From IMG/VR virus record IMGVR_UViG_3300037042_002125, positions 62,001 through 126,000 of that record: a DNA stretch of 64,000 nucleotides. One strand, written 5' to 3'. The translations under genes were made by a program, and so were the position numbers. A model generated the notes under the pieces. That model searched no databases. It was given only the letters and a program-made list of their open reading frames with translations, and was not told the DNA's origin. Position 1 is the first letter of the stretch. Each line of letters opens with the position of its first letter. Shown in pieces: positions 7,718 through 35,066 of this stretch.

Positions 7718-7725
7718 ATTTACAG
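7718..7725 (-). promoter_or_regulatory. phage promoter-like motif (AA)CTGTAAAT(A); also 8837, 15770, 26848, 28010, 32499, 34690 (-) and 35023, 44712 (+)
   Basis: recurrent exact 8-mer, intergenic or at gene ends, oriented with the downstream unit. Confidence 0.65.
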
Positions 7726-11634: not shown

Positions 11635-11764
11635 TTTAGGCTTTCCATAGCTAGAACAGCGATTTATTGCTTAATTTGTAAGCAAAACCAACCAAAGTTA
11701 GGACCAAAGATGCTACCCAGTAGGGGACATAATTGTCCTTGTCAAAAGTGCTTATGAAAGGGGT

Positions 11765-11842
11765 TGGTGGGACGTGTAGGACTTGAACCTACGACCAATG
11801 GATTATGAGTCCACTGCTACTGACCAACTGAGCTAACGTCCC
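11765..11842 (-). tRNA. tRNA with CAT anticodon, probably tRNA-Ile2 (lysidine type) rather than Met
   Basis: GGGACGT/ACGTCCC acceptor, GTGGA-CTCATAA-TCCAT anticodon arm, GGTTCAAGTCC T-arm, encoded CCA. Confidence 0.93.
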
Positions 11843-11853
11843 ACGCTGAAAAC

Positions 11854-12159
11854 TTACTGCAAGGTCGGGCCAGGTTCCGAGGGGCCTTGCTCTTGCTGTT
11901 CGCCAGAAGGTGCTTCACCACCCTCTGCAAGCTCAGCTGGTTGTTCGGCAGCCAACGCGGCGGCCGCAGCTTCCTGTTGATTGAACTCTTCGACGGCCTG
12001 CTGGATCTGTGAGGTAGCTTGGGTCTTGATGCTATCGAACAGGTCCTTGGTCTGACCCAAGGGACGCGGCAGCAAGGAGTCAAGGATGATTTCGGCACCG
12101 CGCACACGGACTTGCAGATTGATAATCAAATCCTTTTGTTGTTCTTCGGTCATTGGCAT
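11854..12159 (-). CDS. hypothetical acidic protein
   Basis: 101-aa ORF with AAGGA RBS. Confidence 0.7.
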   Translation of the reverse strand: MPMTEEQQKDLIINLQVRVRGAEIILDSLLPRPLGQTKDLFDSIKTQATSQIQQAVEEFNQQEAAAAALAAEQPAELAEGGEAPSGEQQEQGPSEPGPTLQ

Positions 12160-12321
12160 TTCAGTTTCCTTTGGGTTGGTTTACTAGCAGGGAATTTTGA
12201 TGTTTGGTTAAGGGTTCCGATTGCATCGCACAGTGTCCGCCAACAGGGCGGCCTGTGCCTACGCAATCAACTCATTCTATTTCGGCGGTTACGCATAATT
12301 CACCCCGAGTTTGTGCGCTTT

Positions 12322-12720
<399 letters not shown>

Positions 12721-12756
12721 CACCACAACCATATGAAGGTCAAGTTAGACTTACCC

Positions 12757-12826
12757 TTCTCAAAGTACGCTAGGAGAGAATGTACCAAATCAAGTATGCA
12801 AGATTTGGCCTAACGTGCTTTGAGAA
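12757..12826 (-). ncRNA. structured ncRNA D (unknown)
   Basis: terminal stem TTCTCAAAGCACGTTAGG/CCTAGCGTACTTTGAGAA plus inner CCAAATC/GATTTGG hairpin. Confidence 0.55.
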
Positions 12827-12829
12827 AGA

Positions 12830-12994
12830 TAGTGCCACAGTTGGAAAACATTCCTAGCCCCGATCATCTGTCTTGCGACAGACGCCTTACTATCAAAAGC
12901 CTAAATTTCTCACGTCTAGACAATGATCTCTCTTAATGTAGGCTCACCGACCTGAGACAGGCCGACTCTCAAACGCTCTCCAACTGTGGCACTA
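12830..12994 (-). ncRNA. structured ncRNA C (unknown)
   Basis: perfect 16-bp closing stem TAGTGCCACAGTTGGA/TCCAACTGTGGCACTA; TCTGTC-GCAA-GACAGA GNRA hairpin. Confidence 0.65.
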
Positions 12995-13004
12995 GCACTA
13001 ACCC

Positions 13005-13158
13005 TTCTTTGACCGCACTAACCTTCGGCACATTTATTCAATCGCCTTTCGGCGCAACGTGCAGCAACAAGACTAGCATTTCAGTTAGACGCCGCGGCGT
13101 TTATATACCTACCAACTTCTAGATTAAATAGGCATACCCAAATAGTGCGTTCAAAGAA
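13005..13158 (-). ncRNA. structured ncRNA B (unknown)
   Basis: closing stem TTCTTTGAACGCACTA/TAGTGCGGTCAAAGAA (15/16); CGCC-GAAA-GGCG GNRA hairpin. Confidence 0.62.
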
Positions 13159-13185
13159 AGGTCCTACTACCCATGATATAATTTA

Positions 13186-13371
13186 GGGTGCTGGCCGGCT
13201 AAGTAGGACCTCAATCCAGTTTTCGTGTCTTCAGATTTGTGGGGGCCTAACCCTCTCCGAATAACGATGCAGCCACTTAAGGCTAGTATGACCACCCACA
13301 CATTTTTCACTGGAAGCCCTATGTAGGTTTTTACTGACTGCAGGCGACGAACTTAACCTTCACCAGTATTT
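13186..13371 (-). ncRNA. structured ncRNA A (unknown)
   Basis: closing stem ATACTGG/CCAGCAC; nested TCCAGT/ACTGGA and TGTGGG/CCCACA stems; no ORF. Confidence 0.5.
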
Positions 13372-13375
13372 CTAT

Positions 13376-13624
13376 TTACAATTTGAGCTCATTGCAGATT
13401 GCACTGACAAGGTCTGTCCATGTTTCAATTTTGGCACAAACTTTATCGCTCAGTTCAATGTTGAATCTCTCTTCGAACTCCATAACAAGCACAATCAAAT
13501 CCAGAGAGTCTGCACCACTCTCTGAGATATTCTTATCAATCCGAATTTGATCTTTAGCCACACCTAAGTGTTCTGCTATGGTAGTATGGACACCCATTAC
13601 AATGTCCGACTTGGTAAGTATCAT
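13376..13624 (-). CDS. acpP: acyl carrier protein
   Basis: 82 aa with GADSLD phosphopantetheine site and MEFEERFNIEL helix. Confidence 0.9.
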   Translation of the reverse strand: MILTKSDIVMGVHTTIAEHLGVAKDQIRIDKNISESGADSLDLIVLVMEFEERFNIELSDKVCAKIETWTDLVSAICNELKL

Positions 13625-13807
13625 CTACTTCTCCATATCTACACACATCAACAGTGATGTAAACAAACGTTCTACTTTTTTACGATCACGTTTCCACAGC
13701 TTACGGGCCTTTCCTGGTGGCGGTGCACAGCAATTACACTTCCACCCACCTGGGCCAATAGACTTGTGGTTCATAACCTTCCGGTAGAACGCCTTTTCAG
13801 TTTGCAT
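13625..13807 (-). CDS. small basic Cys-containing phage protein
   Basis: IGPGGWKCNCC motif; AGGAG RBS. Confidence 0.65.
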   Translation of the reverse strand: MQTEKAFYRKVMNHKSIGPGGWKCNCCAPPPGKARKLWKRDRKKVERLFTSLLMCVDMEK

Positions 13808-13986
13808 GAAATCTCCTTGAAGTTAATCATCGCTTCATGGGATTCTCCTTAAGTTGGATTGGATTGAAATGCAGGAACACTAAAAATAGTGTTTACATAA
13901 AGAAAAATGCAGTTTACGCTACTGCAAAACGTAGTCAAAAGTTGACGTTAAACGTCAACAAAGTAGGAGAACTATAACTTTTACTA

Positions 13987-14568
13987 TTAGGCCTTTGGCA
14001 AGGTCACACCGACCTGACCTTGGTACTTACCACCGCGGCTGGCGTAAGTCGTTTCGCACTGCTCGTCGCTTTGGAAGAACAACATTTGGGCGCAGCCTTC
14101 GTTGGCGTAAATCTTTGCTGGCAGCGGCGTTGTGTTCGAGAACTCAAGCGTAACGTATCCTTCCCACTCTGGCTCAAGAGGAGTGACGTTGACAACAATG
14201 CCGCACCTGGCGTAAGTGCTCTTGCCCAAACAAATAACAAGTACGTCACTAGGGATAATGAAATACTCCAAGGTACGGGCCAGCGCAAAGCTGTTAGGTG
14301 GGATGATACAATATCCCTTGCCGCTAACGTCAACAAAGCAACCTTCGTCAAAATCCTTTGGATCAACAATGGTGCTGTTGATGTTGGTGAAGACCTTAAA
14401 CTCGTCTGCACACCGTACGTCGTAGCCATAAGATGATGTCCCATAGCTAATAACCTTTTTGCCTTTGTTGGCGGATCGCACTTGCCCTGGCTCAAAAGGT
14501 GCAATCATAGGTCTGAATTTTAAGCCTAGGCACTGCTCTCGAATCCATTTGTCGCTTTTGATACTCAT
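13987..14568 (-). CDS. dcd: dCTP deaminase
   Basis: [32 protein letters not shown] motifs; proteobacterial type. Confidence 0.97.
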
Positions 14569-15150: not shown

Positions 15151-15762
15151 GAGAAAACAAAAGAGAGAACATAGACGCTTTTCGTACCACTTCATCTTTC
15201 GAAGCCCACCTTAGTGGTTCGTGGTCTGGACTATGCCTTAACCAATCATGCCGCACAGCTAATGCGGTTAGGCTTTTCTGATAAAGAAATCCCTACATGA
15301 CTTGAGGTCCGCGCCGTCTAGTCTCTACACCTTCCCAAAATTTTAGCTTTGGGCTTGGCTCGGCGTTATCATATATCAGTACGTCACATTCTCTGCTCCA
15401 TAAGGAGACTGGCTAGTTACGGTTTTTGATGTGGCCGCCCAGCGGATGCCAACAACCGGTGACTGTGGAAACTGTTATTACCACCTGACTTAGAGTTCGC
15501 CGAATTTGACGCGATTCACCTTCCCCCTAATTTACCTACCTACTATTTTTCAAGTAGCTGCAGGTTTTTCGAAGGGACATTTTATACGCCTTTCGGTTGC
15601 GTTCTTCAATCCTAGGAAATCAACGGCTGGTGAGTTACACACCAGCGGTTAGGCCCTGTCGTGACTTCTGCGGATTTAACCCAAACGCATTTTTCGTAGA
15701 TGCACAATTATCTCCTTGAGGAGTCTATCAATGTACGCCTATGTTCTCACTTTTGTTTTCTC
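15151..15762. repeat. 27-nt inverted repeat arms (15151-15177 and 15736-15762)
   Basis: GAGAAAACAAAAGTGAGAACATAGGCG vs CGTCTATGTTCTCTCTTTTGTTTTCTC: 25 WC pairs, 1 G:U, 1 mismatch. Confidence 0.9.
15183..15585 (-). ncRNA. group I intron ribozyme core, IC3 Azoarcus/tRNA type; no host gene seen; 5' boundary uncertain (15585 or 15734)
   Basis: CGCGTC-AAATTCGGCGAA (P3/P4), AACGCCGAGCCAAGC (P4/P6), GAAGGTGTAGAGACTAGACGGCGCG (P7/P3), AAGGCATAGTCC (P7), P9 ACCAC/GTGGT, candidate terminal G at 15183. Confidence 0.9.
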
Positions 15763-15788
15763 ACTATCTATTTACAGTTTGAGCAAAA

Positions 15789-25800: not shown

Positions 25801-26130
25801 TGTTTCTACTCAGCGTGTCCGTAGTTTATTTTAGCAGGAAATCGCGCTTTCTACTGGAGAAATCACCGATTTTAGCAAAAAAGACGCAGAAAAAGCACAT
25901 TTTTGCAGTAGAAAAGCGCAGAAAAGCCCCTGAAATGTTGCTTATTTTAACAGCAGATTTAGGGGCTTTTCAGTGGAGGTCTTGATCATAACGTGGGTCC
26001 GTGTAGGTCGTACCTACTGAGATTACTGGTCCTTATTGTGGTCCAGTAGATTGGTTTGTTCTACGGCGTACATACGGATAAGGGCTGGGAAAGTAAAACA
26101 ATCCCAACCCTTCATCAACTACCAAAAGGT

Positions 26131-34596: not shown

Positions 34597-34699
34597 ATCA
34601 AAGTTAAAAAGGGGGCCTTCAGGATTTACACAACTGGGTATACTGTCTATAATAAGTACGTCACGTTGTGTAATATCTTTCTACCTTATATTTACAGTT

Positions 34700-35000
34700 C
34701 AAAAGAAAGAATAAAAAGAGTAAAAAGCTGAAAGGGCGCGAAGCGCATCTTTCGCTATCGCTTTCGATCTACGTAGCGAAGCGGAGTAGATCAAGACATA
34801 CTTAGGACCGCGACTTCACCTTTCTACTGGTTAAGGTGATTCTAATCAAACTCGATCTAATCGACTAATCTGATGCTCGGGTCACGTCGCGTACTAAGGT
34901 TACTCTGAGCACCGCTTCGCTTCGCTACGCCGGCGCTCGACTAGTCTAAAGATTCGCTATCGCTCATCTTTATTTTTACTTACCCTTACTCTTTTTTTAA
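34700..35000. other. candidate replication origin (palindromic multi-hairpin region at the strand switch)
   Basis: GCGAAGCG/CGCTTCGC and TTCGCTATCGCT repeats in hairpins, A-rich left and T-rich right flanks, next to helicase-like gene. Confidence 0.5.
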
Positions 35001-35066
35001 TAGACTGAAAAGACATAACACACTGTAAATTCAAGTAACAAAATCAAGTCAGTAAGGCCCCCTAGA

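What the first reader, a model, noticed from the sequence alone, without database searches (positions are those of the whole stretch)
12757..13381. Tandem array of four unrelated stem-closed ncRNAs leading into the tmRNA
Seen: ~615 nt with no ORF, tiled almost gaplessly by four modules (13371-13186, 13158-13005, 12994-12830, 12826-12757), each closed by its own terminal helix (one a perfect 16 bp). GNRA tetraloops (GAAA, GCAA) read correctly on the minus strand. Two modules share the 3' flank GAAGGGU(U/A)AG, and a promoter-motif variant (TTGTAAAT, 13374-13381) sits just upstream. I recognise none as tRNA, SRP, RNase P or 6S. Inference: a polycistronic precursor processed into novel small RNAs (decoys, sponges or anti-defence RNAs), co-expressed with tmRNA and tRNA.
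Basis: partly seen in the sequence, partly recalled or inferred. Interest (0 to 1): 0.75.

Follow-up and report, generated by a model that had tools for sequence, protein, structure and literature searches.

The report
Structured RNA leader before phage tmRNA
A freshwater jumbo phage carries about 625 bases of protein-free, strongly folding RNA sequence in front of its tmRNA gene. Part of it is always present in related phages and part is an optional cassette, and its function remains unproven.

Summary
Window 12753-13381, minus strand, is non-coding and matches no Rfam family. It lies in the longest ORF-free gap of a 222-kb phiRSL1-like jumbo phage and folds far better than shuffles (z -8.1).

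The "four closed modules" picture needs correcting.
- M2, M3 and M4 are genuine long-helix-closed domains (z -4.9 to -7.6).
- M1 is not. Its closing helix is absent in relatives, and its core D1 (13163-13327) is nearly invariant yet no more stable than shuffles.

Ten sister contigs show the real layout.
- **Constant part:** hairpin H1, D1 and M2.
- **Optional part:** a 248-nt cassette (M3+M4) bounded by the 8-nt direct repeat AGAAGGGT.
- **Extra gene:** some sisters carry a 218-aa probable GIY-YIG homing-endonuclease gene at the same joint.

The shared flank GAAGGGT lies 7-9 nt before that gene's ATG. It is buried in the 12-bp closing helices of M2 and M4.

A recurrent phage motif, caaacTGTAAATA, sits just upstream, and no terminator follows. 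Co-transcription with the tmRNA is therefore plausible but unshown, because no RNA data were available.

No homologues exist outside this narrow clade, so covariation is minimal. I favour a cis-acting processing, insulation and ribosome-site-masking leader (0.4) over trans-acting small RNAs (0.3).

The parts
13370..13387 (-). Phage promoter-like motif ctcaaatTGTAAATAgaa. It overlaps the acyl-carrier-protein (ACP) stop codon TAA at 13376-13378.
   Evidence: TGTAAATA occurs 32 times against 10.3 expected. Twenty of the 32 copies lie outside ORFs of 80 aa or more and are oriented with the genes. The extended consensus caaacTGTAAATA(g/a)a is seen at 8 sites. The motif is invariant in L038 although the next 45 nt diverge. 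Its function as a promoter is inferred.
13332..13368 (-). H1, a 5' hairpin at the start of the non-coding stretch.
   Evidence: It forms in both haplotypes. Its basal helix keeps pairing in L038 through two double changes (U-A to C-G, G-C to A-U) and one single change.
13163..13327 (-). It is nearly invariant but not unusually stable.
   Evidence: One variable site in 165 nt across 5 haplotypes, including L038, whose flanks differ by 6-16%. Fold z = -0.6. The covariance model R1 matches only this genome among 21 related jumbo-phage records.
13001..13162 (-). M2, a 162-nt constant domain. It is closed by the 12-bp helix ACCUUUCUUUGA/UCAAAGAAGGGU and contains a GAAA-capped hairpin.
   Evidence: z = -4.9. 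Of 7 variable sites, none breaks a predicted pair. The covariance model R2 matches only this genome.
13001..13008 (-). First copy of the direct repeat AGAAGGGT, a Shine-Dalgarno-like box.
   Evidence: In L045-L048, L050 and L051 this box is followed by aagactATG of a 218-aa ORF.
12753..13000 (-). Optional 248-nt cassette (M3 + M4 + second repeat copy). It is absent in L038, L039, L040 and L049, and in the endonuclease-carrying contigs L045-L048, L050 and L051.
   Evidence: A metagenome contig skips 12752->13001, with 8 nt fitting both sides. Fold z = -7.7. No other copy was found in the genome, in IMG/VR or in the GTDB genomes.
12830..12994 (-). M3, a 165-nt domain. It is closed by a helix of about 24 bp (16 bp perfect, then G-U-rich) and contains a GCAA-capped 7-8-bp hairpin.
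   Evidence: z = -7.5 on the minus strand against -4.8 on the plus strand. The inverted-repeat arms are 100% complementary over 16 nt.
12754..12829 (-). M4, a 76-nt bulged hairpin. Its 12-bp basal helix UCUUUCUCAAAG/CUUUGAGAAGGG buries the second AGAAGGG box.
   Evidence: z = -6.7 to -7.6. The helix appears in the minimum-energy fold.
12753..12760 (-). Second copy of the direct repeat AGAAGGGT.
   Evidence: In L043 and L044 it is followed by gactatATG of the 218-aa ORF.
12330..12737 (-). Two-piece (permuted) tmRNA gene with tag ANDENFRMVA. It is the downstream neighbour and the probable co-transcript.
   Evidence: ARAGORN. Rfam tmRNA_permuted scores 85.3 bits; beta_tmRNA scores 70.6 bits.
11765..11842 (-). 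tRNA-Met (CAT), the only tRNA gene of the genome. It lies downstream of a 101-aa ORF (11854-12159).

Best explanation
The stretch is the structured, non-coding 5' part of a phage tmRNA operon.

**Proposed mechanism**
- Transcription starts at, or reads through, the phage promoter-like motif that overlaps the ACP stop codon.
- It then runs through hairpin H1, domain D1, domain M2 and, in this phage, the optional M3-M4 cassette. It continues into the two-piece tmRNA gene, and probably on to a 101-aa ORF and tRNA-Met.
- M2, M3 and M4 each fold on their own, because their 5' and 3' ends pair into long helices of 12 to 24 bp.
- I think these helices mainly act in cis, in three ways:
  - They keep neighbouring RNA parts from misfolding with the tmRNA.
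  - They offer double-stranded cutting sites, for an RNase III-type enzyme of the host, that release the tmRNA precursor.
  - In M2 and M4 they hide the AGAAGGG ribosome-binding box.
- In sister phages that box serves a homing-endonuclease-like gene inserted at exactly this joint.
- The M3-M4 cassette is dispensable. It was lost, or gained, by recombination between the two 8-nt AGAAGGGT repeats.

**Shown**
- The anatomy, the strand preference and the presence/absence pattern.
- The position of the box before the inserted gene.
- The recurrence of the promoter-like motif.
- The lack of homologues elsewhere.

**Inferred**
- Transcription, cutting and masking of the ribosome site.
For: **Structure and strand**
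-.

**Constant and optional parts**
- Shown across ten sister contigs and four metagenome runs.

**One joint for every rearrangement**
- Every rearrangement falls right after AGAAGGGT.
- In L043-L048, L050 and L051 the box lies 7-9 nt before the ATG of a 218-aa ORF.

**Identity of the inserted ORF**
- It has a weak Pfam GIY-YIG match (E 4e-4).
- It shows YVY...YVGKG..R..H..E..N motifs.
- Its homologues are annotated as homing endonucleases.
- It is 40% identical to an ORF next to the tmRNA in a distant relative.

**Masking of the box**
- The 12-bp closing helices of M2 and M4 both pair a CU-rich strand with the box.
- The phage's usual ribosome-binding core is AAGGA/AGGAA.

**Co-transcription**
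- The promoter-like motif sits directly upstream.
- No promoter or terminator consensus lies between it and tRNA-Met.

**Selection on the fold**
- H1 carries compensatory changes.
- None of M2's 7 variable sites breaks a pair.

**A parallel in a distant relative**
- In G020 the spacer before its permuted tmRNA also folds into two long-helix-closed modules. Many spacers between its tRNA genes are structured.

**Published precedent**
- RNA hairpins that sequester the ribosome site are shown for the T4-family homing endonuclease gene mobE and for I-TevI, and are implicated for segB. SegB sits in the T4 tRNA region (PMC3014915).
Against: - **No ORF to mask here.** In this window no ORF follows either AGAAGGG box. 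Masking cannot be the present function in this phage.
- **Over-built domains.** 160-nt multi-branched domains are far more than a masking hairpin needs.
- **D1 unexplained.** D1 is the best-conserved part, yet it is not unusually stable (z -0.6). The insulator or processing idea does not account for it.
- **No phage enzyme.** The phage encodes no RNase III, so cutting would depend on the host.
- **No RNA data.** None exist.
- **Conservation may mislead.**
  - The near-identity of D1-M2 between phages that differ by 6-26% in flanking genes may be a gene-conversion tract next to the endonuclease site.
  - If so, it is not purifying selection, and conservation is weak evidence of function.
- **Circular test.** The pair-preservation test is circular, because the structure was predicted from the same sequences.
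Confidence: 0.4

Rival explanations
1. The domains are cut out of the precursor and persist as separate, stable, trans-acting small RNAs. They would resemble RNAC and RNAD of the T4 tRNA region and act on host or phage factors as decoys, sponges or anti-defence RNAs.
For: - Each of M2, M3 and M4 is closed by a long terminal helix. This is the architecture expected for RNAs excised from a precursor.
- D1 and M2 are nearly invariant among phages whose flanks differ.
- The location, in a phage tRNA/tmRNA locus, matches T4 RNAC and RNAD. Those are real, late-expressed and still of unknown function (PMC3014915, PMC9697503).
- An analogous pair of modules lies before the tmRNA of distant relative G020.
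Against: - M3-M4 is absent from several otherwise near-identical phages, so it is dispensable.
- No homologue exists outside one narrow clade.
- The genome encodes no partner protein such as Ro60, a reverse transcriptase or SmpB.
- The near-perfect 16-24-bp helices are more likely to be destroyed than protected by host RNase III.
- No RNA data exist.
Confidence: 0.3
2. The whole 380-625 nt acts as one large ornate RNA. It would be analogous to GOLLD or ROOL, which phages encode near tRNA islands, and would have a constant core and a variable insert.
For: - The size and the phage tRNA/tmRNA context match.
- GOLLD also has a conserved region and a less conserved region, and can sit beside tRNA-Met (PMC12286853).
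- D1 and M2 abut without a spacer. Competing helices (two CCUAC copies against GUAGGACC) link them.
Against: - No match to the GOLLD or ROOL models, or to any other Rfam model at a credible score, even at E <= 10.
- The domains fold independently, with no predicted long-range helix joining them except a weak 4-bp pair.
- 40% of the length (M3+M4) is optional.
- It is found in a single narrow clade.
Confidence: 0.1
3. Mostly non-functional sequence. The stretch would be debris of a shrunken tRNA cluster. It would have been shaped by homing-endonuclease-driven recombination and slippage, with hairpins that arose as DNA palindromes and with conservation due only to recent gene conversion.
For: - Relatives carry 19-20 tRNA genes at the equivalent locus, with ACP and the 60-aa ORF lying between them. 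This phage keeps only tRNA-Met.
- The identical tract ends sharply inside H1 and at the endonuclease joint, as a conversion tract would.
- The locus is an indel hot spot.
Against: - G-U pairs make the folds much better on the transcribed strand than on the other strand.
- H1 shows compensatory changes.
- None of M2's 7 variable sites breaks a pair.
- GNRA tetraloops cap helices.
- Phage genomes are compact, and this is the largest ORF-free gap in 222 kb.
- Neither ARAGORN nor the Rfam tRNA model finds a tRNA-like remnant.
Confidence: 0.2

Closest known systems
T4 RNAC and RNAD (species 1 and 2 RNAs of the T4 tRNA gene region)
   Same: - Small non-coding RNAs encoded in a phage tRNA locus and made together with tRNAs.
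- Their function is still unknown (PMC3014915, PMC9697503).
- A free-standing GIY-YIG endonuclease gene (segB) sits in the same T4 region. Here, a probable one sits in sister phages.
   Different: - No sequence similarity. A blastn search against 50,697 phage records found nothing.
- Here the neighbour is a two-piece tmRNA and there is only one tRNA.
- Expression of these modules has not been shown.
- One cassette is optional.
Ribosome-site-sequestering hairpins of phage homing endonuclease genes (I-TevI, mobE; implicated for segB)
   Same: A helix pairs the Shine-Dalgarno box of an endonuclease gene with an upstream complementary strand. In sister phages the AGAAGGG box, 7-9 nt before the ATG, lies inside the 12-bp closing helix of M2 or M4 (PMC3014915).
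   Different: - In this window no endonuclease gene follows.
- The helix closes a 76-162-nt multi-branched domain rather than a simple hairpin.
- Any effect on translation is untested.
GOLLD and ROOL large ornate RNAs
   Same: Large structured RNAs of unknown function that phages and prophages encode near tRNA islands (PMC12286853).
   Different: - No covariance-model match.
- The build is modular, with independently closed domains.
- 40% of the length is optional.
- It is confined to one narrow clade.
RNase III processing stems of rRNA operons and T7 early transcripts
   Same: The sequences flanking a structured RNA pair into long helices (12-24 bp here). Such helices would be substrates for a double-strand-specific nuclease, and they punctuate a multi-gene transcript.
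   Different: Cleavage was not tested. The phage has no RNase III of its own. This comparison rests on established knowledge, not on a tool result.

Membership tests
GOLLD (RF01998) / ROOL (RF03087) | Match to the family covariance model | tested here: not met
   A sensitive-filter cmscan of window 11700-14000 listed no match to either model at E <= 10.
GOLLD (RF01998) / ROOL (RF03087) | Encoded in a phage or prophage next to tRNA genes | tested here: met
   The genome is a 222-kb virus record. A tmRNA gene lies directly downstream and tRNA-Met follows about 900 nt further on.
T4 RNAC/RNAD | Sequence similarity to the T4 RNAs | tested here: not met
   A blastn search (word size 11) against the phage collection gave only chance hits of 20-33 nt.
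T4 RNAC/RNAD | Discrete stable transcripts processed from the tRNA-region precursor | not testable with these tools
   No RNA sequencing run holding the sequence was listed.
Bacterial Y RNA (YrlA, RF02553) | Model match, and a Ro60 (TROVE) partner gene | tested here: not met
   No Rfam hit in the region. No TROVE domain in the genome.
Retron msr-msd RNA | Adjacent reverse transcriptase gene | tested here: not met
   No RVT_1 match anywhere in the 222-kb genome.
Miniature inverted-repeat transposable element (tested for the M3+M4 cassette) | Direct repeat flanking the insert (target-site duplication) | tested here: met
   The 8-nt repeat AGAAGGGT lies at both ends. A contig lacking the cassette has a single copy.
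Miniature inverted-repeat transposable element (tested for the M3+M4 cassette) | Terminal inverted repeats at the insert ends, and multiple copies | tested here: not met
   The insert ends TAGTGCTAG... and ...GTACTTTG are not inverted repeats (read directly from the sequence). It is single-copy in the genome. It is absent from IMG/VR and from the GTDB genomes.
Group I/II introns, RNase P, 6S, SRP, known ribozymes and riboswitches | Match to the Rfam covariance model | tested here: not met
   Within 12753-13381, the only matches at E <= 10 were two plant microRNA models at E 3-4.6, which is chance level.
Endonuclease-gene ribosome-site-sequestering hairpin | The Shine-Dalgarno box of a downstream endonuclease ORF is paired in a stable helix | tested here: inconclusive
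   Met in silico for the sister contigs L043-L048, L050 and L051. In this window the same helices and box exist but no ORF follows.
RNase III processing stem | Helix of about 20 bp or more that is cleaved by RNase III | not testable with these tools
   Helices of 12 bp (M2, M4) and about 24 bp (M3) are predicted. Cleavage needs an experiment.

The most novel reading that the evidence does not exclude
D1 and M2, with M3 and M4 as accessory units, would be new families of phage-encoded stable structured RNAs. They would be released from a tmRNA/tRNA precursor and act in trans during infection. For example, they might bind and titrate a host RNase, a ribosome-rescue factor or a defence factor. 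That would make them a tmRNA-linked counterpart of the still unexplained T4 RNAC/RNAD and GOLLD/ROOL RNAs.
Probability: 0.25. Interest if true: 0.7.

Novelty: new member of a known kind. Interest (0 to 1): 0.42.

Why it matters
- **An open question.** Phage tRNA islands repeatedly harbour orphan structured RNAs such as T4 RNAC/RNAD, GOLLD and ROOL. None of them has a known function.
- **A natural experiment.** This locus comes with natural variants: constant domains, a dispensable 248-nt cassette, and versions with and without a homing-endonuclease-like gene. All sit in front of a phage-borne two-piece tmRNA. That could make the role of such RNAs testable by comparing natural isolates.
- **A caution for scans.** Near-identity next to a homing-endonuclease site need not mean selection on the RNA. 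A "shared 3' flank" can be a ribosome-binding box and recombination joint rather than an RNA-processing signal.
- **The limit.** The family is so far confined to one uncultured freshwater and sediment phage clade, and no expression data exist.

Tried and rejected
**Searches for homologues that found nothing useful**
- ACP and tail-sheath single-protein scans of IMG/VR found no relative, or only an identical fragment.
- The dCTP deaminase gene led to 35 unrelated phage loci without a tmRNA. In the large protein database it led to host-like betaproteobacterial genes.
- DNA-pattern scans:
  - An M1 25-mer, an M3 20-mer and a permuted-tmRNA pattern in IMG/VR gave 0 hits.
  - A two-anchor D1 pattern in the JGI metagenomes gave only the already known contig and one chance hit, L053.
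  - An M3 helix pattern in the GTDB genomes gave 0 hits.
- nhmmer searches of the modules against 120 bacterial tmRNA loci, mostly Rhodocyclaceae, gave nothing.
- Covariance models of D1 and M2 matched nothing in 20 related jumbo-phage records.

**Ideas rejected**
- **A 47-aa lipoprotein in D1 (ORF 13167-13310, with an LSGC lipobox).** In 4 of 5 haplotypes the single variable site puts Arg in the hydrophobic core.
- **Group I intron carrying the endonuclease gene.**
  - There is no model match.
  - No choice of boundary within the 8-nt repeat gives both a U before the 5' splice site and a G at the 3' end of the insert.
- **Transposon-like insert.** It has no terminal inverted repeats and no other copies.
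- **Origin of replication.** The cumulative GC-skew minimum and the switch in gene orientation lie near 39-41 kb, not here.
- **Modules taken from the host ssrA neighbourhood.** No similarity was found.
- **tRNA-cluster gap in relative G019.** It turned out to be protein-coding.

**Technical dead ends**
- RNA sequencing runs: none was listed.
Full report
**Where the window lies.** The window is bases 62001-126000 of a 222,078-bp IMG/VR virus record that CheckV rates 93% complete.
- It encodes T4-type topoisomerase II subunits and a contractile tail sheath.
- The closest cultured relatives by sheath are Ralstonia phage phiRSL1, Burkholderia phages BcepSauron and BcepSaruman, and Achromobacter phage Motura, at 42-46% amino-acid identity.
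- Its dCTP deaminase is 78% identical to betaproteobacterial enzymes.
- Its tmRNA is of the two-piece type found in Rhodocyclaceae.
- The host is therefore probably a freshwater or sediment betaproteobacterium. About 20 lake and sediment metagenome runs hold parts of the locus.

**Gene order on the minus strand.**

| Feature | Window coordinates |
|---|---|
| dCTP deaminase | 13987-14568 |
| 60-aa ORF | 13625-13807 |
| 82-aa acyl carrier protein (ACP) | 13376-13624 |
| The finding | 12753-13381 |
| Two-piece tmRNA | 12330-12737 |
| 101-aa ORF | 11854-12159 |
| tRNA-Met, the only tRNA gene of the genome | 11765-11842 |

**Check of the observation.** Most of it holds.
- The stretch has no credible ORF. 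Together with the tmRNA it is the longest of only eight ORF-free gaps of at least 250 nt in the genome.
- As RNA, the 644 nt fold at -237.6 kcal/mol against -187.6 +/- 6.2 for shuffles, z = -8.1.
- M2, M3 and M4 are each closed by a long terminal helix and are individually significant:
  - M2 has z -3.8, or -4.9 with its full 12-bp closure.
  - M3 has z -7.5 and M4 has z -7.6.
- The perfect 16-bp helix is in M3. G-U pairs, which exist only on the minus strand, extend it to about 24 bp.
- M2 and M3 fold 13-24 kcal/mol better on the minus strand.
- GAAA and GCAA tetraloops cap hairpins.
- The modules are unrelated in sequence.
- No Rfam family matches at a credible score. The only matches at E <= 10 are two chance-level plant microRNA models.

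M1 is the exception. The 5' strand of its supposed closing helix is replaced in relatives.

**Relatives and the real architecture.** The ACP protein led to ten sister contigs. They give five haplotypes of the non-coding stretch and four layouts.

| Layout | Contigs | Order after ACP |
|---|---|---|
| a | window, L042 | M1-M2-M3-M4-tmRNA |
| b | L038, L039, L040, L049 | M1-M2-tmRNA |
| c | L043, L044 | M1-M2-M3-M4-[218-aa ORF]-tmRNA |
| d | L045-L048, L050, L051 | M1-M2-[218-aa ORF] |

- An ENA contig of 217 kb, for which no DNA was available, has the gene spacing of layout (d).
- Metagenome contigs laid on the window show the same variation. One skips 12752->13001, with 8 nt fitting both sides. 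Another has 880 other letters in place of 12443-12752.
- The stretch therefore has a constant part and an optional 248-nt cassette (13000-12753, M3+M4). The cassette is bounded by the direct repeat AGAAGGGT.
- The cassette is single-copy in the genome and was found nowhere else. It has no terminal inverted repeats.
- A slippage deletion between the 8-nt repeats across a very stable hairpin region is the simplest origin of the short form. A gain by recombination cannot be excluded.

**The constant part.** RNAalifold on the five haplotypes gives three elements.
- **H1 (13332-13368).** This is a 5' hairpin. Its basal helix is kept in the divergent L038 haplotype by two double changes and one single change. 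The hairpin forms in both haplotypes.
- **D1 (13163-13327).** This domain is closed by only 5 bp.
  - It is almost invariant: one variable site in 165 nt.
  - L038 nevertheless differs from this phage by about 6% in dcd, about 16% across the ACP region (ACP is 62% identical as protein) and 26% in the tmRNA.
  - Yet D1 is not unusually stable (z -0.6).
- **M2 (13001-13162).** It has 7 variable sites.
  - Three lie in predicted pairs and all keep pairing through wobble. Four lie in unpaired positions.
  - The chance of this under neutrality is about 0.02. The test is circular, because the structure was predicted from the same sequences.

The identical tract ends sharply inside H1 and at the joint where the 218-aa ORF is inserted. 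It could therefore be a gene-conversion tract left by endonuclease-driven recombination rather than a mark of strong selection. I treat the conservation as weak evidence.

**The shared flank.** Every rearrangement falls right after AGAAGGGT.
- In layouts (c) and (d) the box is followed by gactatATG or aagactATG of the 218-aa ORF. It therefore sits where a Shine-Dalgarno box should.
- The phage's usual ribosome-binding core is AAGGA/AGGAA.
- In the minimum-energy folds, M2 closes with ACCUUUCUUUGA/UCAAAGAAGGGU and M4 with UCUUUCUCAAAG/CUUUGAGAAGGG. Both helices bury the box against a CU-rich strand.
- Evidence that the 218-aa protein is a GIY-YIG homing endonuclease is moderate:
  - It has a weak Pfam LEM-3 GIY-YIG match (E 4e-4, below the curated cut-off).
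  - It shows YVY...YVGKG..R..H..E..N motifs.
  - Its homologues are annotated as homing endonucleases in Vibrio phage MZH0603 and Burkholderia phage BcepSaruman.
  - It is 40% identical to a 214-aa ORF lying directly after the permuted tmRNA of distant relative G020.
  - I call it a probable GIY-YIG homing endonuclease.
- The allele that carries it has a different tmRNA acceptor region with a compensating acceptor stem. This is what a cleavage-resistant target variant would look like.
- Published work shows ribosome-site-sequestering hairpins for I-TevI and mobE and implicates one for segB. SegB lies in the T4 tRNA region (PMC3014915).

**Transcription.**
- TGTAAATA occurs 32 times against 10.3 expected. 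Twenty copies lie outside ORFs of 80 aa or more and are oriented with the genes.
- Eight copies share the extended form caaacTGTAAATA(g/a)a.
- The copy at 13387-13370 differs from that form at one base. It is invariant in L038 although the following 45 nt diverge.
- The motif resembles the T4 late promoter TATAAATA. That comparison is from my own knowledge.
- No further copy, no sigma-70-type promoter and no convincing terminator lies on the minus strand between it and tRNA-Met.
- Co-transcription of the stretch with the tmRNA is therefore a reasonable inference. No RNA run could be found to test it.

**Search for more distant homologues.** None was found.
- Pattern scans of IMG/VR, the JGI metagenomes and the GTDB genomes returned only the same clade or chance hits.
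- 120 bacterial tmRNA loci carry nothing similar.
- Covariance models of D1 and M2 match nothing in 20 related jumbo-phage records.
- Only two of those relatives have a permuted tmRNA.
- In G020 the tmRNA lies in a cluster of 19 tRNA genes.
  - The 488-nt spacer before it folds (z about -4) into two modules closed by 16-17-bp helices.
  - Many other spacers there are also structured. These modules share no sequence with the ones here.
  - Homologues of the ACP and the 60-aa ORF sit between tRNA genes in G020.
- The locus studied here therefore looks like a reduced tRNA island. Long-helix-closed spacers appear to be a recurring feature of such islands in this phage group.

**Interpretation.**

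| Explanation | Confidence |
|---|---|
| Cis-acting structured leader of a tmRNA operon | 0.4 |
| Mostly non-functional debris of a shrinking tRNA island | 0.2 |
| One large ornate RNA working like GOLLD or ROOL | 0.1 |

- **Cis-acting leader.** Autonomous domains would insulate folding, offer double-stranded cutting sites, and mask a ribosome-binding box that serves an endonuclease gene in sister phages.
  - Against it: no ORF follows the box in this phage, the domains are much larger than masking needs, and D1 is left unexplained.
- **Trans-acting RNAs.** This remains a serious rival, with T4 RNAC and RNAD as the nearest precedent (PMC3014915, PMC9697503).
- **One large RNA.** The context fits (PMC12286853), but membership fails the model test and 40% of the length is optional.
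- **Debris.** The strand-specific G-U pairing, the compensatory changes and the compactness of the genome argue against this.
- **Partner proteins.** The genome encodes no Ro60, reverse transcriptase, SmpB or RNase III that would point to a partner.

**Verdict.**
- It is a new sequence family within a known kind: orphan structured RNAs in phage tRNA/tmRNA loci.
- It is confined to one uncultured clade, with minimal covariation and no expression data.
- The natural variants, with and without the cassette and with and without the endonuclease-like gene, make it a usable test system once a host is found.

Noticed in passing
L043:1745-2401 (also L044-L048, L050, L051); absent from the window: A 218-aa probable GIY-YIG homing-endonuclease gene is present or absent between the non-coding stretch and the tmRNA in near-identical sister phages. 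Its homologue (40% identity) lies directly after the permuted tmRNA in distant relative G020 (L256:7549-8193).
   Followed up: partly
L043:2333-2740 compared with window 12330-12752: The endonuclease-carrying allele has a strongly divergent tmRNA acceptor piece and 5' coding piece. Its acceptor-stem changes compensate each other (GGGGGTG/CACCTCC becomes GGGCCTG/CAGGTCC). This fits a cleavage-resistant target variant. L038's tmRNA is only 73.5% identical to the window's.
   Followed up: partly
L252:1501-2174 (G033:C1, around 170880-171551): In a distant relative the permuted tmRNA model spans 674 nt (97.8 bits). The segment between the acceptor and coding pieces is about 470 nt long and overlaps a 200-aa ORF. 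This may be another mobile insertion inside a two-piece tmRNA gene.
   Followed up: no
L256:6664-7151 and other spacers of L256 (G020:C1:44000-58000): - A relative has 19 tRNA genes plus a permuted tmRNA.
- The spacer before its tmRNA forms two modules closed by 16-17-bp helices.
- Each module has a T-arm-like hairpin (CCUGG-AUCGUCC-CCAGG) right beside the 3' closing strand.
- Several other spacers between tRNA genes have z of -3 to -5.8.
   Followed up: partly
L251:615-695: A tRNA-like element has a canonical T arm (GUGGGUUCGAACCCCAC) and an acceptor-like 3' strand, but ARAGORN does not call it. It lies between tRNA-Ser and tRNA-His of G020.
   Followed up: no
Genome-wide; window copies at 7724, 8843, 13380, 15776, 28016, 32505 and 34696 (minus strand): The recurrent promoter-like motif caaacTGTAAATA(g/a)a is about three-fold over-represented, mostly intergenic and oriented with the genes. 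It resembles the T4 late promoter TATAAATA.
   Followed up: partly
window 15196-15788: A second ORF-free stretch of 593 nt lies directly behind another copy of the promoter-like motif (15776). It is only weakly structured (z -2 on the minus strand).
   Followed up: no
window 25835-26130; window 34597-35066; genome 183958-184260: - These are three other ORF-free gaps with strong predicted structure (z -5 to -7.6).
- The first contains back-to-back terminator-like hairpins.
- The second is a long-range palindromic region beside a copy of the promoter-like motif.
   Followed up: partly
window 13203-13211, 13323-13327 and 13159-13167: Two copies of CCUAC compete for one GUAGG(ACC). The 9-bp helix AGGUCCUAC/GUAGGACCU could replace the 5-bp closure of D1 and part of M2's closure. 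The C/U polymorphism at 13161 is tolerated by both folds. This may be a conformational switch.
   Followed up: no
window 13987-14568 and 12330-12737: The phage dCTP deaminase is 78% identical to enzymes of Janthinobacterium, Chitinimonas and Massilia. The tmRNA is of the Rhodocyclaceae two-piece type. Both look like captures from betaproteobacterial hosts. The phage has no SmpB of its own.
   Followed up: partly
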